Shown here in pieces: positions 7,831 to 21,900 of a stretch of 64,000 nucleotides of DNA; the first letter of the stretch is position 1, and each line of letters begins with the position of its first letter. The stretch spans positions 14,946,998 through 15,010,997 of the forward strand of contig OZ037767.1 in assembly GCA_964035545.1 (NCBI GenBank). The letters are read 5' to 3'. The notes under the pieces were generated by a model, which saw nothing but the letters and a program-made list of their open reading frames with translations, made no database searches and was not told where the DNA came from. The translations under genes and the position numbers were made by a program. This stretch comes from Bugula neritina (taxonomy: Eukaryota; Animalia; Bryozoa).

Positions 7831-10800
7831 CCTTCGCTGCTCTCTACGGACGGAGAATTACTGACTACTGGAGAGGCACTCTTTGGTAGAGAAAGGAAGA
7901 GTCCTTCAACTGCACTTTGCAGAGCTTTCATACAGCCGATAGATGACTCATAGCCGCCAGCTCTGTCTGCTGCACTCGCTGACCTCATGTGCCGTAAGTA
8001 TCTGTGAGTATACAGTATAGTATAATACAGTATACAGTATAGTATAATACAGTATATAGTATAGTATAATACAGTATATAGTATAGTATAATACAGTATA
8101 TAGTATAATACAGTGCATAGTATAATACAGTATATAGTATAGTATAATACAGTATATAGTATAGTATAATACAGTATATAGTATAATACAGTATATAGTA
8201 TAGTATAATACAGTATATAGTATAATACAGTATATAGTATAATACAGTATATAATATAGTATAATACAGTATATAGTATAGTATAATACAGTAGGCCTAT
8301 ATAGTATAGTATAATACAGTATATAGTATAATACAGTATATAGTATAGTATATAGTATAGTATAATACAGTATACAGTATAATATAATACAGTATATAGT
8401 ATAATACAGTATATAGTATAGTATAATACAGTATATAGTATAATACAGTATATAGTATAATACAGTATATAGTATAGTATAATACAGTATATAGTATAGT
8501 ATAATACAGTATATAGTATAGTATAATACAGTATATAGTATAATACAGTGCATAGTATAATACAGTATATAGTATAATACAGTATATAGTATAGTATAAT
8601 ACAGTATAGTATAATACAGTGCATAGTATAATACAGTATATAGTATAATACAGTATATAGTATAGTATAATACAGTATATAGTATAGTATAATACAGTAT
8701 AGTATAATACAGTGCATAGTATAATACAGTATATAGTATAATACAGTATAGTATAATACAGTATATAGTATAGTATAATACAGTATAGTATAATACAGTG
8801 CATAGTATAATACAGTATATAGTATAATACAGTATAGTATAATACAGTATATAGTATAGTATAATACAGTATATAGTATAATATAATACAGTATGTAGTA
8901 TAGTACAATACAGTATATAGTATAGTACAATACAGTATATAGTATAGTATAATACAGTATATAGTATAGTACAATACAGTATATAGTATAGTACAATACA
9001 GTATATAGTATAGTATTATACAGTACATAGTATAGTATAATACAGTATATTGTATAGTATAATACAGTACATAGTATAGTATAATACAGTATATAGTATA
9101 GTATTATACAGTACATAGTATAGTATAATACAGTATATAGTATAGTATAATACAGTACATAGTATAGTATAATACAGTATATAGTATAATATAACACAGT
9201 ATATAGTATAATACAGTATATAGTATAATACAGTATATAGTATAGTATAATACAGTATATAGTATATTACAGTATATAGCATAGTATAATACAGTATATA
9301 GTATAGTATAATACAGTATATAGTATAATACAGTATATAGTATAATATAACACAGTATATTGTACAGCGGGGAAGGGGGGACAAACACCCACCCTTTGTG
9401 TTTTATGTCATCCAGGGAAGGAGTTGCTGGTCCCAGACTATCGTGGATGGACTCCTCATACTTATACAAAACCTCCACCTTCTTAGGAATGGGCATGAAT
9501 GTAGTCTGGTGACCCTAAAACAGTAACCAAGGTCAAGGTCAAACAGATACAAAGCCGCTGAAAACAACATCGAGAGAAAATAGAGATTGGGTGAATGTCA
9601 GAAATTAAAGAATTCCTCATAATAGTTCGAATTCAACCAACTATTTGGTACAACTATAAAATTGTTATGAAAGACATTTGAAATAAACTATTTTTTAAAT
9701 ATGAAACATTTTAGTGTAACTTTGGTATACCAGGTAATCAACAAGGAATACTAAACTCTGTAACTTTTAGCAAAACGAGTAGATGTGAGACCTAAACTGC
9801 AAGTTTGCCAGAAAGTAGCTCAAATGTGACACAAACACTAATCAAATCTAGAGCAAACAGTTTGATGGAAATGATAGAATAACTCCCAGTAAAACAAGGA
9901 AAATTCAATGTAAAATACAGCTGAGTTCAGCACATTTCAGTGTTATATATCACACAGTCTACACGAGAGAAAGTAGTAAAAGGCATTAAAACTATATTGA
10001 GCACACAACTCCAATAATAATCTGATGCTAACGCACTGCGAACAAAATAAAATAGACATGTTTTTTACCAGCTGGCTGGCCATATCACGGGCGGGTGCCA
10101 AGGCTGCCTTCTTGTTAGCCTTCTCTGTAGCTTCCTGTTCTAGAGCTCTTTGAGATTCGTGGTGGGACTCAAGAATTTCCTCGGCGGGTGCATCAGTAAA
10201 CATCTAACATGATATGTATAGTAAAAAGTAGTTGTTTGCTCAACCAGAGTACATGGCAGAGAGAAGACAAACACAGGATAATAATTCTACACATGGTTTA
10301 TTTATTATGCAGTGTTTAAAAATTAATATATAGAGAGCAGCCGTGGTCTAGAGGTTAGAGCGTTTGGCTTAGTAAACTCGAAGTCATGAGTTTGGACTCC
10401 AGTAAAGGCCATTAGTGATGTTGGAAAGAGCATTTAGTCATTTAGTTACATATGAATAAGTCCTTCGGCGACTTAAAAAACATTTTCATCAGGGTTTCTC
10501 ACGAGACTATAAAATTAAGTTAGAGTTTAAAAATACATATTTACATTCAATGAAACTTTTTAGTCGAACCATGCAGTAAACATTATTTTACAGCACATGA
10601 ATAATTGCAACTTGTAAATTCCCAACTACCACTTCCTTAGCCAATAGACCACTCTCTATTCACTAGACCACTCCCCTATTCACCAGACCACTCCCCTATT
10701 CACTAGACCACTCCCCTATTCACTAAACCACTCCCCTATTCACCAGACCACTCCTCTATTCACTAGACCACTCCCCTATTCACTAGACCACTCCTCTTAT

Positions 10801-12489
10801 TAACTAGACCACTCCCCTATTCACTAGACCACTCCCCCTATTCACTAGACCACTCCCCCTATTCACTAGACCACTCCCCTTATTCACTATACCACTCCCC
10901 CTATTCACTAGACCACTCCCCCTATTCACTAGACCACTCCCCTATTCACTAGACCACTCCCCTATTTACTAGACCACTCCCTCTATTCACCAGCAGCTCC
11001 GCTATGAGTCATCACTCACCAGGTTATCAATGAGAAGCCGCTGCCGCTTCTCCTTCTCCAACTTCTCCCTCTCCAGCTGCCTCATGACGTCTGAAACTGA
11101 AGAGTTGACCTTATTGGCAGCCTCCACAGCTATGCAGTTCTCTATGTGCAGCTCATCTGCTGACTGCAACAGACAACACTTTGTATCTCCAGCATTAAAG
11201 AGCAGCTTACTATGACTTGATACTCTTTATTATATACTATACTATTACTATAACTATATTCTGATCTATTAGAAACAACTGAAATTATATGGAAACACAC
11301 AAAAACCACTGAATTACTGTTTATTTTGATCTACCAGCCACTATAAAACTGTGCGAACAACTAGTGTAGGACTATAAATATAACCACATGTGCAGACTGC
11401 AGCTAGCAACTCTGAACATACACCAGATCATGCTCTATTCAATCTGTTATAGACACTGCCAAAAGTATTTTAGTTTACACAGAGATCAGGGATAACTCCT
11501 AATAACTCACTTTTTTAAACTTGTTGTGCGCTATTAGCTCTTTGTTTTCTTTTTTGTAAGCTTCTACTTTCTTTTTCGTACTTTCCACATCAACACCATT
11601 CACGAGATTAAATACTAAAACACAATCGTGAACAAAAACATCATATCAGATTGTAGCCTATAGCCATCGAATTTAGACTAACATGCAGATAAAACAACAC
11701 AACAATAAAGTTCGCAGTACTGTCTCATCATCCAGAAAGAAAACAATAGAAAATTAGGCCCAAAGTTCTAAGCTTGTCACAGTTCTAAATTGTAAAGTAA
11801 ATAAATATGCATAATCTGACAAGATAAACATATAAAGATGATAAGACGTATAAATACACATACTGATTGTCTCCACTTCTTCTAAGTAGTCGTTGTATTC
11901 CCTGAGAGTACTAAAGTTGTCTTCTTTTAAATTATAACTAAAGATAAACAAGGAAATACCATTTAAACTGGCTGCTAGGCAGATTTAGAATATTGTATCA
12001 TCATATTTATTAACTTCTGAAACAACTATTAAAGAAAAAAAATTGAAGTGAGTTGCCTGAGATTATGCTGACTATTGAAGCTTCTAGCATGTTTGCTGGC
12101 AGTTAGAATTATGCATTTCTACTAAAATAGTTAATCTTGATAGGTGAAACCAGACATACTCTTTAAGTATTTTTCTTCTGATTTCAATTTCCTTTTCGAT
12201 GCTAGCATCTTCAAAAAACTGTAGTCGGAAGTTGGCTCGCCTCAAGCTGACATTGCATTCTGGGCAGAGACCACTTCCTCTGACAAATAGAAGCTCTACA
12301 CAGTTTTCACACCTACAATTTTAGGAAAATACTCTGACTATAAAACTTATTTTAAACAAAGTGAGCTGATAGAAGAGTAGTCAGATAAGCCACTTACAAA
12401 GCATGGCCACATACGTTCACCAGTAGCTTTAGGTTCGGGTTTCTGTATTTAGTGGTGCGACATCTCGGACAAATGGTGTCGTCATTCAT
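7812..12489 (-). CDS. MNAT1: CDK-activating kinase assembly factor MAT1
   Basis: Exons 12489-12398, 12312-12160, 11937-11864, 11614-11511, 11163-11020, 10203-10069, 9514-9393 and 8001-7812. RING: [44 protein letters not shown]. Also [18 protein letters not shown] and C-terminal [17 protein letters not shown]. Confidence 0.95.
8008..9362. repeat. AGTAT-based micro/minisatellite filling MNAT1 intron 7
   Basis: Mosaic of AGTAT, AATAC and AGTATAT units; it produces the spurious Y/T/I/L ORFs. Confidence 0.95.
10335..10513 (+). mobile_element. tRNA-derived SINE, copy 2 (internally deleted)
   Basis: GAGCAGCCGTGGTCTAGAGGTTAGAGCG head and body similar to copy 1. Confidence 0.75.
10640..10992. repeat. 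20-21-bp minisatellite (CACTAGACCACTCCCCTATT), about 17 copies, MNAT1 intron
   Basis: Direct tandem periodicity. Confidence 0.9.
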
Positions 12490-13980: not shown

Positions 13981-16264
13981 ATGGAGGTGAGAGATGTGTG
14001 CTCTAGTCTCTCCAATATAGTTTCTACAATTGAAAATACACTTTTTGAGGCTACTGGTTATATTCAAAGTGGTAAGCTGTATGTTAATAAAATCTCATTT
14101 TTTTATTTCGTTCTACTTGATTGCTGAATATTTAATTTTATGCAGAAGTCTAGTTTACCACCAGAAAACTTCTGCCTGAGATATTGTTTAGCAGTTGAAA
14201 GTTTTGCTATTCCAATCTTCTATATGCAGGGTCTCTGGAAGACTTTGTATCTAAAAAAGTCGGCTGTCTTTTTAAAGTAATCCGCTGTTATTCTGAGGAG
14301 TTCAAGAGGTGAGTTGAGATATTTTAGCAATTGTCGAGTGTTGATAATTTCGTTGCTGTCAGCTGTAATTGTTTCTATGATGTCATAGCTTGACGTAAAA
14401 CAAGTTCAAAGTAAAAGTTGCTCGCAGTTCTGTCATTGGGTGTATTCATTTTTCTGTGGGTATGTTCTTAGACTCAGTATCTCTACCAAACGAGAGTTGG
14501 ATGATTTCTGTCAAGGTCACTTCAGAGAAGTTGGAGTGCAACAGGCAGTTGCTGACTTAGATGAAGCAGAGGTACTCGTTCTATTCAGTAACCTTTGACC
14601 TTTGTTGGATTAGTCAGCAGTTAGATGTTTGCAATGGCTGATTACTTTGTTGAACCTTTTTGAAATGTGAACTTTAATAATTTATCAAATAGTTTTGACA
14701 GTGAAATAAGCTGAATAGCTTTGGAGTGTGCTAAACCTGAAAAATAATTGCCAGCATTGGGATTCGAACCCCAGACTTCCGGCTTGCAAGCAGGCGTGCT
14801 AACCATTACACTACGGGGACTACTAGGTAATCTCTTCATTACAAAACCCATTCACCCTAATCTCATTGATGAGTGGAACTCCCATTTCCTTTATTTTTCA
14901 GATTAAGTGGGAGGAGTTTCTTCAAGATGTAGACAAAAGATTATTGGGTTCGAATGATACGTCTGCAGCCCTGCCACGTGTGGGTGACCTGCTGACTCTA
15001 AACACAGTACTGACGGATGCACGCACCGAACAGGAAGTGGAAATACAAACATTGTTCAGAGGAGATCCGGTGCTGTTGATACTGCTGCGCCACTTTGCTT
15101 GACTACCCTGACGAGACCACGTAGCTGACGTCCTTGCTCGAAAGGTAGTCTGTAATATATATGTTACTATCTCTATAATATATGTGTTACTATCTGGGAT
15201 ATATATATTACTATCTATAACATATCTTGCTGTCTATAATATATGTTACTGTCTATAATATCTTTGGTGACATCCTCTTGCGACATGGTGGGTGATGATG
15301 TCGTAGGCTAGAGATTATTGGCAGCGTTGTTTGTTGTAGAATGAGTTGAGGTCAGCAAACATCGTGGTCATCTCTTTTGGAGTTGTTCAGGGAGCCAAGA
15401 AGTGGTTAGAAGAAACGAGATGCCCGTTTACTCTGCTTTTAGACCCGGAAAGAAAGTTGTACAAGTATGTGGGGCTGCAACGCTCACTCTATAAGGTGAG
15501 GCAACACTGCAGAACTACTGTATGGATACTCATGACTTGAAGCTTATATTGGTGTTCTGGGTTAATTCATCGTCTAGCTGGTGTTATACTGAATCCATCT
15601 AATACAACTTTTGTATTTTTCACAACTCAAGTTTTCAAAGCCAGTTAGAATGTATGATTTAAGTCAAGTCTTAGCAGCCGTGGTCTAGGGGTTAGAGGGT
15701 TTGCCTAGTAAGCACGAAGTCATGGGTTAGAGCTTGACAAAGGTCATTGATGATGTTAGAAAGAGCATCTAGTTATAATTGCTCTTGTGTCACATCTGAA
15801 TAAGTCCTTAGCCCGATTTAACAAAAAACCCATCAGTGGTTTTCTCACAGGAATGGTGACTATAAACTTGCGTGAGTCTTTATCAACTGTAAAAAGTGAT
15901 GGGCATTATGATTGTAAGTAAATCAACAGTGCAGTTATGTGCAGATTGCAGATAACCAAGTAATTGGTTTTCTTGACTCCATAGCAGGCCGTATTTTCAA
16001 AGAAACTTTTATTTTGGTAATTATAATGTAATCATGTTTCTTCACCAGACGTGGGGCTTGAAGAGTGTGATTTTCTATGCTGAGCAGATGTGCCAAGGGA
16101 GACAATTGCCAAAACCGTTTGAAAATGTTGAGGATGACCCTCATCAAATGGGTGGAGACTTTGTAATCAGTGGGAGTGGCCGATTCCTGCTGTTACACTG
16201 CAGTACTAATTCTACTGATAGGCCTAGTGTAGACACCATTCTGAATGTTCTAAATTCAGGCTAA
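13981..16264 (+). CDS. SELENOL: Selenoprotein L (thioredoxin-like AhpC/TSA fold, UxxU motif)
   Basis: Exons 13981-14071, 14230-14308, 14472-14571, 14902-15144, 15340-15495 and 16049-16264 join in frame if TGA 15100-15102 and TGA 15109-15111 are read as Sec: LLILLRHFA-U-LP-U-RDHV. Downstream VVISFG, LLLDPERKLY, DDPHQMGGDFVI and TDRPSV match the SelL/PRXL2 family. Confidence 0.92.
14749..14820 (-). pseudogene. tRNA-like sequence (probably an Ala-TGC-derived pseudogene or SINE head) in a SelL intron
   Basis: GTCCCCG TA GTGT AATGGTTA GCAC G CCTGC TTGCAA GCCGG AAGTC TGGGG TTCGAAT CCCAA TGCTGGC A. A and B boxes and D arm are intact, but the anticodon loop is 6 nt and the acceptor stem is mispaired. 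A T5 run follows. Confidence 0.6.
15673..15877 (+). mobile_element. tRNA-derived SINE, copy 3
   Basis: Colinear with copy 1 over about 200 bp. Confidence 0.8.
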
Positions 16265-16635
16265 CTGTATTGGTTATTTTAAAAATTAATCCTGATGCAT
16301 TTTTTGATTTTGTTGCAACCAGAAAGCCTGCCTCAGTAAAGTTAATTTTTACAAACTCTCACTGGGAAAATAACTCCATTTCACTTGTAGTTTTCTGAAA
16401 AAATCGCCTAAAATAATGCTTTAAGCAAACTGATTACTAATTAGCTTTATTCAATGACAATCAAACAAACTTATGGTTTAAATTAAATTTCTTTTTACAC
16501 ATGAACTATTTTTGTACAGACGCATAAGATGTCCCCTGATACTGTAATAGTAATAGTTATCTCCCATGTACATATTTTCATTGGTACTTTGCAACACTAT
16601 TTGTATACTGGTATTTTATTCATATTTAGCTGATA

Positions 16636-16712
16636 TTAGTGTCTGTATAATGAAGCTTTTTATCCCATTCTTTACTGAGAAGATAAATAGTGGACAACTC
16701 CCAAGACACTAA
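16636..16712 (+). promoter_or_regulatory. Candidate SECIS element (type II, CC apical motif) in the SelL 3' UTR
   Basis: Helix I TTAGTGTCT/AGACACTAA (9 bp). Core ATGAA (16650) with GGAC (16692). Helix II GCTTTTTATC/GATAAATAGT. CC at 16665-16666, 11 nt after ATGA. Apical ministem TTCT/AGAA. AATAAA at 16731. Confidence 0.75.
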
Positions 16713-17139
16713 ACATTTTGACTAGAAATTAATAAATAACCAGTTAAAATGGTGCCTGTTATTAAAACTGTGCATTGAAAATCTGCATTTAGTAATGAAT
16801 ATAACTAATGTGATGTTTTATACAGAGTTGCCTTTTCATGTAATTGCATTGCGGCTATACTTTGTACTATTGGGATGTAATAATACTAATCATTCGTGTA
16901 GATCATAATACCACAGCATACTACTGCTGTAGTTTACTGCAGCAAACCCTTAGACATAGTAGACACATTCTAGATAACTATAAGCATACAGTTTAATTAT
17001 TTAATAAAAAAGTTGGCTCTTAATATTGATATGATTATATATTTTAGAATGTTATTTTATATGTACATGAATATTTCAGGAAATATCTTGATAATGACAT
17101 GCAGACTTATAAACTAAAGAAGCTCCATGCATGATATAT

Positions 17140-18333
17140 TTAAACTAGTCTCCGAACAGGACTACCTACTGCTAAATTGATCTGCCCCTTAGCATACACA
17201 TCTGCAGTTTTAACGACAGTGTTCTTTGGTTCGGAAGGTAGTGCAGCGGGAACACATCCTTTAAGAGGATGCCACACACCAACTGTGTTAGCTGTGGTGG
17301 TTGTAGTTGAGAGTGCAGTGGCACAACATGGGGTCAAAGGTTGCACGGTCACAACCGGATGTTTCATCTCTCTACCGTGACCAGGAGTAAGTGAGAGTGG
17401 TGGTCGCGAGATGACTTTACTGAAGACACTCGGTTGGATTAGTTTTGATGATTCCCGTGTGTTTATAGCTGCTTCAAACCTGCACAGATCGCTTGTTCGT
17501 CCTGCAGATGGTAAAGCAGTAGTGGTGGGCTGCACAGAGCAGAGTTCTTTAGATTGCCCGGTGCTCCATTTTACAGGTGGCTTACCATCGCAATGCGGTT
17601 TATACGGCTCACCTGGAGATGTTGTGAATATTCGCTGAGCTCTTTCACTTCCCACAGCTTTTGTTGCTATGATTGGTGGTTGTTGCAAATTACGGACATT
17701 TAAAATTTCAGAAGAATTGTCAACAGAAATAAGATGTGAAGCTGGTGGTGGTTGCTCTTCATAGCTAAGAGGAGGCTGACATGGGATTCCGTCAACATCT
17801 ATTGAACTTAGCACAGTTGGTAGAGGGTTGTGCACCAAATAATGAGTAGGCAATGGCATGAAAACAGGATTGATGACTGAGTTGGAAAACAGTGGATCTT
17901 TCTTCTTCGCCAAAGTGGGAGGCATGTCAACAATCGTAGGCTTTTCTCCCGTTTTCAAACTTTGATCAATCATAAGTTTCTTTGGGGAGGAGAGGGTGTT
18001 CTTGCTTTTGACCAAATCACAGTCAACGACTTCATTAGAGTTCATTCTCATTGTAAATATTGCAGCATCAGCATTAAGTTTACTGCTGTACTTGTTTTCA
18101 CTTGAACTTACAGTTTTACTTGGAGTGTTTCTGTTTTGAATTTTGTTAGCGTCCTCACACAGCATTGGTTTGGCATCATCGTCTACTTGTTCGGGTTTTA
18201 GCTTCTTCTTGAGTTGCTCGATCTCATCTTTGTTAAGATTTGGCTGTTTTTGTAAATGTTGAGCCAAGAGTAATTTATACCTGTTAGTGCCTTGAACACC
18301 CGAGGGGCGAAGGTCATCTTGTCTTGACAGCAT
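17140..18333 (-). CDS. Intronless 397-aa protein of unknown function, mostly low-complexity, with a PAM2-like motif
   Basis: Uninterrupted 1.2-kb ORF that is not a tandem repeat, with AAAATG start context and higher GC than its flanks. SKLNADAAIF at aa 84-93. Confidence 0.65.
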   Translation of the reverse strand: MLSRQDDLRPSGVQGTNRYKLLLAQHLQKQPNLNKDEIEQLKKKLKPEQVDDDAKPMLCEDANKIQNRNTPSKTVSSSENKYSSKLNADAAIFTMRMNSNEVVDCDLVKSKNTLSSPKKLMIDQSLKTGEKPTIVDMPPTLAKKKDPLFSNSVINPVFMPLPTHYLVHNPLPTVLSSIDVDGIPCQPPLSYEEQPPPASHLISVDNSSEILNVRNLQQPPIIATKAVGSERAQRIFTTSPGEPYKPHCDGKPPVKWSTGQSKELCSVQPTTTALPSAGRTSDLCRFEAAINTRESSKLIQPSVFSKVISRPPLSLTPGHGREMKHPVVTVQPLTPCCATALSTTTTTANTVGVWHPLKGCVPAALPSEPKNTVVKTADVYAKGQINLAVGSPVRRLV

Positions 18334-18936
18334 TTTCGGTTATTTTCAAAGTTTGACAATTTAGTAAATGAAATAAATATGAGAGTAAGAGAAAGTGTAG
18401 AATTAAGTAGTATAAAATCCAGTAGAAAATATAAATTCCTAACATAAGTGTGCTAAATGGCTGCACTAATATTTAAAATATTAGCTTCATGCATGACTGA
18501 ACGCTATAACTCAATGATTTTTTAGAATGTATAATTTTGCAACTCATTACTAGTCATTGCAGTTGTAACTAACATTTATAATTACGATCAATGACTACAG
18601 TTTGTAAACAAAATAAATTCCACATTTATTAAACTACAATTCAGTAACAAAAAACAGTGACAGAAATACCAAGAAAAGCTAAATTTTGTGAAGTTTAAAC
18701 AGCTGTTTGTATGTTATGGGTAGTTATGGTACTATATCAAGTGCCGTTGATCAAGATGGCAAAAATATTGAACACCACAAAACAAATGATTACATAATAT
18801 TCTGCGATCACCCGACAGCAATAAATATAGAAATAAACATGTAACTCAAATGATTATTCTAGCATATTCTGCTCTAACACATATAGGCAAATGAGCAGCT
18901 CACTTCTGCTGTAGTATTTTAGTGTTTAGTTACTCA

Positions 18937-21900
18937 TTAGAAGTCCTTCTCTTTAACTCCTTCAAGAGGATTCGGGGCTCCTGCCACTATAGGGATGGGC
19001 TTCTCAATGGTAGTCGAGGGTATAGTGACGACTCTCATGGTGTTGGTGAAACCCGCACCAGCCTTCCATCCAGTCACCACAATCACGTTATCTCCTGAAG
19101 CAGTGAATAGACATAATTACAGCTGAAAGACAAGGATGCTGCTCTGTAATGGGCAAGAAATCAGGCAGAATTCACAAGTTTGTTAAGCCACTGTGAATGT
19201 GACTTCCTGTGTACTACCACAATACTACTACTTCCTGTTTACTAACACCGTGCCAACTCACCCGGTTTAAGGAATCCTCTGTCCAAACCGACGCCGATAC
19301 CTTTGTGGATTCGGTTGTCCATATCTTCTGTCCACTCATCAGCCCTAGCCTCTACAACAGTCAGTATTCCAGTGACTCATCGGTGCTTTATTAGTGAATA
19401 CAAACAGCAAACTTTGTTTAGCAGAGCTACTTAACGGAGTTGCCAAATCTATTATGCATGCCTTCTTGATGTCATAATCATATAAATCCAAGTAAACAGT
19501 TGAAGAGACTATGAAATACTACGAAAAGAAGAAGTGGTGAGGTTTTGAGTCATATGTTATGTAAAAATCTACAACATCTTAGAAATATAAATATTTTAAT
19601 GACGTCTTCTAGCGTCTTTGGTTTGCATACACATCGTTTTTGGAAATTTTTTATAAGACTACATGCTAAATCATTCGGATATTAAACGTCTTGACCCTGA
19701 ACTTGTTATAAATAATCTTTTCCATCACCTACGGGTAGAAAAGAGAGTTATAGAAAGAGGGGTACATCAACAGAATACGATAAGCTGACAAGCTTTCTAT
19801 ACCACTACAAAGCCTGGCAGCAGTGCATGCAATAGGTCAAGGACACACAATAGTCTGAAAAAGAATCGTAGGTGTTGCGGGCCCACTGCACCAGTTAATC
19901 ACACAGAAACATATACAGCGTGCATGCTGGTACCCTTAAGGTGTTCATAACATATACTCAGCTTCCTTAACTTAATGTAACCAGTGAGGGGTGGGTTAGT
20001 GCAAGCGGGAGGGTTAGAGAAATTATAGGACCTGAGGCTTAGAAAAATAATATAACTAAATCAACTGCACAGCCATGTTGGAAAGTATAGTTTAGTTCGA
20101 CAAAATAGATAGATAGATAGATGCAGTGCAAACACCCAGCACGATATATATTGTATACTTTTACCATCTGAATAATGTAAAAATAGAATGGAGACTATTA
20201 GCATGAAGGAACTACACATTCATTACATACAATACGTGAGCACGTCTTACTATCAGTGGAAGTCATATTTCTCTCTCCTTCCAATTAGAAAAATTAGTGG
20301 TCAATGCAGTTTCAATCCTAAATTTCATTGGTCGACGCAATTCTTATCACAAATATCATTGGCTAATAAGATGCAAAAACAAAGCACAATAATATGTCAC
20401 ACACCAGGCAATGAAAAAGCAACATGTCTATAGCCTTATTACCAAGGTGCAAACTATCTAAATATGGAGGGGTGGGCAATACGCACCGACATAGTGTATG
20501 GGGAATACACCTCTGTACAGATGGGCTTGTCTAGCTGTCCGCCCATTCCTTGTGACAGTTATGATGGGAGCCCTCGGTCTATACGAGGAGATGAGATGAG
20601 ATGTCCTGCAAGACAAGCAGATATTTAATGCTAACCAGTAACTTTAGAGTCTGTATTGAGAGTTGTCTCTCCACAATTACCAGGAAACATGAATAAATGC
20701 AAAGAGTCACGTATACAAAACTATTAACAGTAGTGACTAAGAAGATGTTGTAATCAATCAATTCTTTAATCTCCATAATAATGACTACATGTATACTACG
20801 TATGGTGCAGGATTAGCTACTAACTTTCCTGTGGTGGTGCAGACGATGATTGCCTTGGCCAGGCAGCGAAGGGATGCCTCTACCGCTGCCACGGCAGTCG
20901 TGTGAGTCACATCGATTACTGTCGGAGTGAGATGTCGCAGTTCGTCAAATATTCCCTACAATACAGGAAGTAACATACAGGAAGTACAAAACAGGAAATG
21001 TCATACAGGAAGTCAATAATTGGAGTACAGGAAGTAGAGTACAGGAAGTAAAACAGAAAGGAAGTGAGTTACCTTATGAAACATGGCCGCCTCAGCCTCC
21101 CTGCATATCCGGTGCATCATCCTGAGAGACTCGAGGGGGTAGTCTCCCTTGGCCGTCTCTCCGCTCAGCATGACGCAATCCGCTCCGTCCAGAACAGCGT
21201 TTGCTACGTCACTAGCTTCGGCTCTGGTGGGGCGGGGCTTCGAGACCATAGACTCCAGCATCTACATAGACATAGAGTAGACCTTAGACTAAATATTAAT
21301 ATTTTACAGTATATACTACATAATAGACATAGAGTAGACTTTAGAATACATATCAATATACGGTATAGGCTTTAGCATCCACAAATAGAATACTTATAGG
21401 TAACCTGATATCAACATATTAATACAGAATAGCCTCTAATCTCCACACCGCATCTCCGCTCACCTGCGTGGCACATATAACCGGCACACCCGCCTTGTTA
21501 CATTTACTGATCATCATCTTCTGAGCTAAGAACACTTTCTCTGGTGGAATCTCAATGCCAAGGTCACCGCGAGCCACCATAATACCGTCAGTCACGGCCA
21601 GAATCTCGTCAAACCTACAGAATTAAAATGCTGGACTGTGTGACTGATGACTAATAGTAAAGGGACTGAGAGTAGAGGTACTAAGAGTGGAGGTACTGAT
21701 AGTAGAGGTACAGAGAGAGGAAGTACTGACAGTAGAAGTACTGATAGTGGAAGTACTGATAGTAGAGGTACTGAGAGTGGAAGTACTGATAGTGGGGGTA
21801 CTAAGAGAGGAGGTACTAATAGCTGAGGTACTGGCAGAAGTTGGGAACAGGTTTCAACTTATAAACAGTAACTTCTAATTGTCAGTGCAACTGTTTTATC

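What the first reader, a model, noticed from the sequence alone, without database searches (positions are those of the whole stretch)
16636..16712. Non-canonical SECIS with CC in place of the apical AA
Seen: the only convincing SECIS-shaped fold in the SelL 3' UTR has a 9-bp helix I, an AUGA/GA kink-turn core, a 10-bp helix II with one mismatch, and then CCA exactly where AAR is expected (11 nt after AUGA). A small apical stem follows and a poly(A) signal lies 19 nt later. Established: CC-type SECIS elements are rare and best known from mammalian SELENOM and SELENOO. Inference: an independent AA-to-CC switch in an invertebrate SelL, in an element that would have to drive two Sec insertions.
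Basis: partly seen in the sequence, partly recalled or inferred. Interest (0 to 1): 0.8.

Follow-up and report, generated by a model that had tools for sequence, protein, structure and literature searches.

The report
SelL SECIS with CC, not AA
The hairpin is very probably the real selenocysteine-insertion signal of a bryozoan selenoprotein L gene and carries CCA where nearly all such signals carry AA, a rare variant already known from three human genes and predicted in one sea squirt gene.

Summary
At 16636-16712 there is a 9-bp helix I, an AUGA/GA core, a 10-position helix II with one U.U, a CCA bulge 11 nt after AUGA, a ministem, and AATAAA 19 nt downstream.

It lies 372 nt after the stop of a spliced SelL gene with a U-L-P-U motif. 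A convergent ORF limits the 3' UTR to at most 875 nt.

It is the best SECIS-like fold in the window by three scans. One is a covariance model built only from 14 AA-type SECIS elements: 24.7 bits, E about 0.009, runner-up 17.3.

A sibling species keeps AUGA, GA, helix II and CCA. Its five substitutions fall in loops or preserve pairing.

SelL orthologues from five other source species, not identified, all carry AA, so AA-to-CC is derived here.

The same genome has a second CC-type element, in MsrB1 (UCCA bulge). It is conserved in another species' mRNA with compensatory helix changes. Eleven other selenoprotein genes carry AA.

CC-type elements are known in human SELENOM, SELENOO and TXNRD3, and one is predicted in Ciona savignyi DsbA. 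This is therefore a new member of a known kind. Activity is untested, and the CC versus CA register is slightly ambiguous.

The scan had already noted the SelL UxxU motif on this window, and SECIS-bearing PRXL2B and MsrA genes elsewhere in this genome.

The parts
14902..15144 (+). SelL exon carrying the two Sec codons (TGA 15100-15102 and 15109-15111; motif U-L-P-U)
   Evidence: Translation. A GT..AG joint 14569|14900 and a spliced contig 15142|15338 appear in the sibling's RNA-seq contigs. The same HFA-U-xP-U-R context is found in orthologues.
15340..15495 (+). SelL exon, AhpC/TSA-like fold
   Evidence: Pfam PF13911 AhpC-TSA_2, E = 1e-8. Both sides are spliced in RNA contig record 4.
16049..16264 (+). 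Last SelL coding exon, stop TAA at 16262-16264
   Evidence: Translation. It is 97% identical to the sibling's ORF P0001. Against the sibling, 9 codon differences are synonymous and 2 are non-synonymous.
16636..16644 (+). SECIS helix I, 5' strand
   Evidence: Nine Watson-Crick pairs with 16704-16712.
16650..16653 (+). SECIS core AUGA
   Evidence: Invariant in the sibling.
16655..16664 (+). Helix II, 5' strand
   Evidence: Pairs with 16682-16691, with one U.U at 16658/16688. Invariant in the sibling.
16665..16667 (+). Unpaired CCA bulge in the place of the AAR motif
   Evidence: It is unpaired in the minimum-energy fold and invariant in the sibling. Infernal aligns 16665-16668 (CCAU) to the model's uAAA bulge.
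16668..16681 (+). Ministem (16668-16672 with 16677-16681) and apical loop: a form 2 SECIS
   Evidence: The sibling's substitutions at 16676 and 16677 lie in the loop, and G16677A turns a U.G into U-A.
16682..16691 (+). Helix II, 3' strand
16693..16694 (+). SECIS core GA (3' half of the G.A/A.G tandem)
   Evidence: Invariant in the sibling.
16704..16712 (+). Helix I, 3' strand
   Evidence: The sibling's A16706G changes U-A to U.G, so pairing is kept.
16731..16736 (+). AATAAA hexamer, a possible poly(A) signal
   Evidence: It reads AATAAT in the sibling. Other hexamers on the + strand are at 16482, 16761 and 17003. The cleavage site is not determined.
17140..18333 (-). Convergent 397-aa ORF that bounds the SelL 3' UTR
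   Evidence: The same ORF is called in sibling contigs L003 and L004.

Best explanation
The hairpin at 16636-16712 is the single SECIS element of a bryozoan selenoprotein L mRNA.

Shown:
- It has every structural hallmark of a form 2 eukaryotic SECIS.
- It sits in the only available 3' UTR of a gene with two conserved in-frame UGA codons.
- Its structure is preserved in a sibling species.

Inferred:
- Its kink-turn core (AUGA/GA) recruits the SECIS-binding protein and the Sec-specific elongation factor with Sec-tRNA.
- Both UGA codons, three codons apart and about 800 nt upstream in the mRNA, are then read as selenocysteine to make the U-x-x-U diselenide motif.

The apical AAR motif is replaced by CCA. 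Other SelL genes carry AA, so this is a lineage-specific AA-to-CC change of the kind seen in mammalian SELENOM and SELENOO. The same genome tolerates CC in MsrB1 as well, so its decoding machinery presumably accepts both forms.
For: - **Anatomy and fold:**
- **Top candidate by three independent scans:**. R1 was built from 14 AA-type elements only and gave 24.7 bits, E about 0.009, with the next hit at 17.3 bits.
- **The reference set is real:** 87.9% of cells are paired against 58% in shuffles and about 40% when partners are slid.
- **Gene identity and splicing:**
- **Both TGA codons unchanged in the sibling's spliced RNA contig:** one search lists no difference at 15100-15111.
- **Purifying selection downstream of the UGAs:** 9 synonymous against 2 non-synonymous codon differences.
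- **UTR bounded by a convergent ORF:**
- **Sibling comparison:** 5 substitutions in 77 nt, none in AUGA, GA, helix II or CCA. One is U-A to U.G in helix I and one improves a loop-closing pair.
- **Orthologues carry AA:** L010, L011, L014, L015 and L006.
- **Second CC-type element:** MsrB1 in the same genome (L036:3032) is matched in another species' mRNA contigs (L054-L056). The UCCA bulge and ministem are identical, and helix II has two double compensatory changes.
- **One SECIS serving both Sec residues of SelL** is established for fish SelL (PMC3316567, citing Shchedrina et al. 2007).
Against: - No functional assay has been done.
- Rfam RF00031 gives no hit at E<=10. That model also scores the canonical SelL elements at only 23-25 bits, below its 35-bit threshold, misses two of them, and finds only two weak hits in the whole genome.
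- Identity to the sibling is 93.5% in the element against 88% for the UTR, so it is not a sharp conserved island.
- The RNA evidence is assembled contigs without strand. The piece covering the element could come partly from the convergent gene's transcript.
- An ATTAAA at 16482 lies upstream of the element, and the true cleavage site is unknown.
- The register is ambiguous by one nucleotide. Infernal places C16666-A16667, not C16665-C16666, on the two conserved A columns.
Confidence: 0.78

Rival explanations
1. It is the same functional SECIS, but the apical motif should be read as C-A rather than C-C. Helix II keeps all 10 positions, the 4-nt bulge is CCAU, and only the first conserved A is replaced.
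For: Infernal's alignment to the AA-only model puts 16665-16668 (CCAU) on the uAAA columns. In 13 of the 14 reference elements the two A's are bulge positions 2-3.
Against: The minimum-energy fold closes U16668-A16681 and leaves a 3-nt CCA bulge directly before the ministem. That matches N-A-A-A|ministem in the references and U-C-C-A|ministem in MsrB1. One reference element (DIO1, UCAA) shows that the register can shift by one.
Confidence: 0.15
2. The hairpin is a chance SECIS look-alike, and the real SECIS lies elsewhere, for example in an alternative 3' exon or beyond the convergent gene.
For: RF00031 gives no hit. The canonical AA is absent. A similar CCA look-alike in a GPx intron proved to be a false positive.
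Against: No other candidate was found in 16265-19000 by three methods. The structure is preserved in the sibling. It is the best hit in 128 kb and lands inside an 875-nt UTR. The sibling's RNA contig shows no splicing within the UTR.
Confidence: 0.05
3. SelL is decaying in this lineage. The UGAs now terminate translation, and the hairpin is a disabled relic whose AA mutated to CC.
For: Two of the three human CC-type elements (SELENOO and TXNRD3) are among the weakest in reporter assays (PMC2761289).
Against: Codons downstream of the UGAs are under purifying selection (9 synonymous, 2 non-synonymous). Both UGAs and the CCA are retained in the sibling. The gene is spliced and expressed in the sibling. 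MsrB1 keeps a CC element across species.
Confidence: 0.03

Closest known systems
CC-type SECIS elements of mammalian SELENOM and SELENOO (and human TXNRD3)
   Same: Both have an otherwise standard SECIS (AUGA/GA quartet and two helices) in which the two unpaired apical adenines are cytosines. Both arose from AA-type ancestors within one lineage (PMC3316567, PMC2761289).
   Different: The gene families differ (SelL and MsrB1) and so does the phylum (a bryozoan). Here the SelL element must serve two adjacent UGA codons. Activity is unproven here.
Canonical form 2 SECIS (Rfam RF00031) of SelL in other animals
   Same: The gene, the 3' UTR position and the architecture are the same, and helix II has the same length and register.
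   Different: Those elements carry GAAA, UAAA or CAAC bulges, while this one has CCA. RF00031 scores them at 23-25 bits and does not report this one at all.
Predicted CC-motif SECIS of Ciona savignyi DsbA (PMC2874816)
   Same: It is a non-mammalian animal SECIS, form 2, with unpaired CC, and a close relative (C. intestinalis) has AA.
   Different: The gene and phylum differ. It too is only a computational prediction.

Membership tests
Eukaryotic SECIS element (form 2) | Lies in the 3' UTR of an mRNA with an in-frame UGA at a conserved Sec position | tested here: met
   It lies 372 nt after the stop of a SelL gene with a U-L-P-U motif. The UTR is bounded by a convergent ORF.
Eukaryotic SECIS element (form 2) | AUGA ... 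GA non-Watson-Crick quartet at the base of helix II | tested here: met
   AUGA is at 16650-16653 and GA at 16693-16694. Both are aligned to the invariant columns of model R1.
Eukaryotic SECIS element (form 2) | Helix I, an internal loop, and a helix II of about 9-12 bp | tested here: met
   Helix I has 9 bp, the internal loops are 5 and 9 nt, and helix II has 10 positions with one U.U.
Eukaryotic SECIS element (form 2) | Unpaired AA(R) in the apical bulge or loop | tested here: not met
   The bulge is CCA and no unpaired AA exists in the apical part. This is what defines the CC subtype.
Eukaryotic SECIS element (form 2) | Ministem and small apical loop above the bulge | tested here: met
   The ministem is 16668-16672 with 16677-16681, and the loop is 4-6 nt.
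Eukaryotic SECIS element (form 2) | Reaches the Rfam RF00031 gathering score | tested here: not met
   There is no hit at E<=10. The canonical SelL elements used as controls also stay below the threshold, at 23-25 bits against 35.
Eukaryotic SECIS element (form 2) | Binds SBP2 or SBP2L and supports Sec insertion | not testable with these tools
   This needs a reporter or binding assay.
CC-type SECIS (SELENOM/SELENOO-like) | CC at the positions of the conserved AA | tested here: inconclusive
   Aligning on the ministem side gives CC-A for AA-R, as in MsrB1's UCCA. Infernal's alignment gives C-A on the two A columns. The first A is replaced in either case.
Selenoprotein L | U-x-x-U redox motif in a thioredoxin-like (AhpC/TSA_2) fold | tested here: met
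   TGA codons are at 15100 and 15109. PF13911 hits at E = 1e-8. Orthologues share the context LLRHFA-U-xP-U-R.

The most novel reading that the evidence does not exclude
CC-type SECIS elements are not a mammalian peculiarity. In a bryozoan lineage they arose at least twice, in SelL and in MsrB1, and are stably kept. In MsrB1 the element persists across species with compensatory helix changes. This would show that the invertebrate Sec-insertion machinery accepts CC, and that a CC element can drive two adjacent Sec insertions.
Probability: 0.6. Interest if true: 0.5.

Novelty: new member of a known kind. Interest (0 to 1): 0.4.

Why it matters
The role of the apical AA motif in SECIS function is still unclear. 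Natural CC variants are the main evidence that AA is not strictly required.

Two further independent CC elements outside vertebrates would widen that natural experiment. One of them serves a two-Sec protein.

They also show that standard SECIS finders tuned to AA can miss real selenoprotein genes in invertebrate genomes. Here RF00031 gave nothing.

The practical consequence is modest: better annotation, plus a convenient pair of elements for reporter tests.

Tried and rejected
- **Rfam on the window and on the UTR.** There was no SECIS hit. Controls showed the model is weak here.
- **A 'CCA' SECIS-like hairpin near GPx (L016:2628).** I first counted it as a third CC element. I rejected it because the exon before it ends in a GTAAGT donor and the exon carrying IKWNFSKFL lies downstream, so the hairpin is intronic. 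The real GPx element is AA-type at L052:1799.
- **UTRs of SelL relatives L005 and L007/L008.** They are too short (318 and 198 nt) and contain no SECIS, so the switch could not be dated more finely.
- **Synteny test of L006's convergent gene against the window's.** No similarity was found.
- **Genome-wide search with model R1.** Only 150 of about 226,000 first-look candidates were scored. It returned five of the model's own training elements plus one weak new hit (27.1 bits, E 6.5) and no new census.
- **Pattern scan of JGI metagenomes for the SECIS core.** All 27 hits were chance matches.
- **Searches for SRA accession numbers and for 'SECIS' plus 'bryozoan' in papers.** Nothing was found.
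- **Searches not run.** The large protein-representative search was not used.

Full report
**1. Observation**

- Helix I: 16636-16644 with 16704-16712, nine Watson-Crick pairs.
- 5' internal loop: 5 nt.
- AUGA: 16650-16653.
- A16654 opposite G16692.
- Helix II: 16655-16664 with 16682-16691, with one U.U.
- Unpaired C16665-C16666-A16667, starting 11 nt after AUGA.
- Ministem: 16668-16672 with 16677-16681.
- GA: 16693-16694.
- 3' internal loop: 9 nt.
- AATAAA: 16731-16736.

RNAfold gives exactly this shape as the minimum-energy structure (-19.7 kcal/mol, z = -3.13).

**2. The gene**

Upstream on the + strand is a spliced gene. One exon reads ...LLRHFA-U-LP-U-RDH..., with TGA at 15100 and 15109.
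- The following exon matches AhpC-TSA_2.
- The last exon ends with TAA at 16262-16264.
- Assembled RNA-seq contigs of a sibling species about 90% identical show the joints 14569|14900, 15142|15338 and 15493|16047. They show no difference at the two TGA codons.
- Against the sibling's genomic contigs (L003 and L004, collinear with 15839-21636), the last exon has 9 synonymous and 2 non-synonymous codon differences.

The reading frame beyond the UGAs is therefore under purifying selection, and the mRNA needs a SECIS.

**3. Where a SECIS could be**

A 397-aa ORF on the minus strand ends at 17140 and is also called in the sibling contigs. The two genes converge, which leaves at most 875 nt for the SelL 3' UTR.

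Three scans agree on the candidate:
- A pairing-based scan ranks 16651/16693 first in 16266-19000. It is also first in all 128 kb of the window, with score 16 and one other candidate at 15.
- An energy-based scan ranks it first, at -20.1 kcal/mol. The only other candidate lies inside the convergent coding sequence.
- Covariance model R1 ranks it first in the window: 16648-16696, 24.7 bits, E about 0.009, runner-up 17.3 bits with broken pairs.

R1 was built from 14 AA-type SECIS elements, eight from this genome and six from SelL orthologues, and it excluded the candidate. The reference set itself shows strong covariation: 87.9% of cells are paired, against 58% in shuffles and about 40% when partners are slid.

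The element is single-copy in the assembly.

**4. Why Rfam is silent**

RF00031 gives no hit at E<=10 on 16200-17400. The model is weak here for three reasons:
- It finds only two sub-threshold hits in the whole 216-Mb genome.
- It scores three canonical SelL elements at 23-25 bits, below its 35-bit threshold, and misses two others.
- Among the loci holding the other own-genome candidates, it reports only a deiodinase element (33.9 bits) and the thioredoxin reductase element (24.1 bits).

Its silence says little.

**5. Comparison with the sibling species**

In L003 and L004 the 77-nt element has five substitutions:
- 16646, in the 5' internal loop.
- 16676 and 16677, in the apical loop. G16677A turns a U.G into U-A.
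- 16702, in the 3' internal loop.
- A16706G, which changes U-A to U.G in helix I.

AUGA, GA, all of helix II and CCA are unchanged. Identity is 93.5% in the element against 88% for the whole UTR. That is compatible with constraint but is not a sharp island. The AATAAA hexamer is AATAAT in the sibling, so it may not be the site actually used.

**6. Other SelL genes**

The word-index protein search and contig look-ups gave SelL transcripts or genomic pieces from several unidentified animals. Wherever the UTR is long enough, the top candidate is a canonical element with AA:
- L010: GAAA.
- L011: GAAA, plus a second GUGA element with AAAA.
- L014: GAAU.
- L015: UAAA.
- L006: CAAC bulge, fold z = -3.75.

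AA is therefore ancestral for SelL, and the CC form is derived in the lineage of the window and its sibling. L005 and L007/L008 have truncated UTRs and are uninformative.

**7. Census in the same genome**

| Gene | SECIS position | Apical motif |
|---|---|---|
| GPx | L052:1799 | AA-type |
| Deiodinase 1 | L046, minus strand | AA-type |
| Deiodinase 2 | L048, minus strand | AA-type |
| Deiodinase 3 | L047, minus strand | AA-type |
| Thioredoxin reductase | L040:2175 | AA-type |
| SelO | L034:3876 | AA-type |
| Sep15/SelM | L038:1156 | AA-type |
| SelK | L035, minus strand | AA-type |
| MsrA | L062:5658 (36.3 bits) | AA-type |
| PRXL2B | L059:4751 (23.5 bits) | AA-type |
| MsrB1 | L036:3032 | CC-type (UCCA) |

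The MsrA and PRXL2B loci came from leads in earlier notes s1-456725 and s1-469137.

MsrB1 is the exception. Its Sec exon reads ...GGSRF-U-IFS. The best candidate downstream has a UCCA bulge in front of a CUCA/UGAG ministem.

mRNA contigs of another species (MsrB1 about 85% identical; L054-L056) carry, 420 nt after the stop, an element with the identical AGC-UCCA-CUCA...UGAG-C-GCU upper part. Its lower helix II is rewritten with two double compensatory changes, U-A to C-G and A-U to U-A. With filters off, the AA-only model picks both MsrB1 elements as the best hits in their loci (16.7 and 14.8 bits) and aligns UCCA onto uAAA.

So 2 of the 13 SECIS elements examined in this genome are CC-type. 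One caveat is that in this genome the MsrB1 element lies 1.85 kb after the stop.

**8. Register**

Infernal opens the U16668-A16681 pair and aligns CCAU to uAAA, which would put C-A on the two conserved A columns. The minimum-energy fold leaves CCA directly before the ministem, as N-A-A-A and U-C-C-A do in the other elements. I favour CC-A as the equivalent of AA-R, but the one-nucleotide ambiguity is real. Either way there is no unpaired AA.

**9. RNA evidence and its limits**

Only Logan contigs were available. A spliced contig continues from the coding exons through the element to beyond 17994. Contigs carry no strand and can merge the two convergent transcripts. An ATTAAA at 16482 and minus-strand signals at 16615 and 16446 exist. 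The cleavage site is therefore not established.

**10. Literature**

- Among vertebrates, CC occurs only in mammalian SelM and SelO, and fish SelL uses one SECIS for both Sec residues (PMC3316567).
- Human TXNRD3 is also CC-type, and SelO and TXNRD3 are weak elements in reporters (PMC2761289).
- A CC motif was reported in the Ciona savignyi DsbA SECIS while C. intestinalis has AA (PMC2874816).
- Invertebrate SECIS elements were described as almost all AUGA_AA (PMC3473315).
- No paper in the library combines SECIS with bryozoans.

**11. Verdict**

The thing is a new member of a known, rare kind of SECIS. It is not SelL-specific in this genome, and it is not the first such element outside mammals.

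The organism is most likely a Bugula-type bryozoan. This rests on earlier notes of the scan and on record names such as BRYA16 and 'symbiont metagenome'. I did not verify it independently.

Noticed in passing
G000:C1:21375531-21375575 (L036:3032-3076): MsrB1 (SelR) of the same genome has a CC-type SECIS with a UCCA bulge. It is conserved in another species' mRNA contigs (L054:855-900), with compensatory changes in helix II. In this genome it lies 1.85 kb after the stop, which suggests a long or interrupted 3' UTR.
   Followed up: yes
L011:1096-1172 and L011:1429-1505: One SelL orthologue transcript carries two similar SECIS elements 333 nt apart. The first has AUGA and the second GUGA. This looks like a tandem duplication, in a protein otherwise said to use one SECIS for its two Sec residues.
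   Followed up: partly
L016:2614-2683 (G000:C1:8341697-8341766): A SECIS-like hairpin with AUGA, 10/11 helix II pairs and a CCA loop start sits inside a GPx intron. Helix I is weak, so it is most likely a chance look-alike.
   Followed up: yes
window 14749-14820 (-) and 15670-15880: There is a tRNA-like sequence (Rfam tRNA, 31.7 bits) and a tRNA-derived, SINE-like repeat inside SelL introns. Contig depths here run to thousands and up to 300,000 in all three runs, so these belong to very abundant repeat families. A similar head sequence occurs at about 10340-10400.
   Followed up: no
window 8000-9360 and 10630-10990: Two long tandem arrays are present. One is an AT-rich unit of about 22 nt (cagtatatagtatagtataata-like). 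The other is a unit of about 21 nt (tattcactagaccactcccc-like).
   Followed up: no
G000 contigs C230, C133, C44, C295: Matches to SelO, MsrB, Rdx and Pyr_redox_dim on these small contigs contain many in-frame TAA and TAG codons.
   Followed up: no
window 17140-18333 (-): A convergent 397-aa ORF, rich in Pro, Ser and Thr, has no obvious family. Its 3' end faces the SelL 3' UTR, and the two UTRs may overlap.
   Followed up: no
G000:C2:4323900-4349000 (-): Three tandem deiodinase-like genes each have an in-frame TGA and their own AA-type SECIS.
   Followed up: partly
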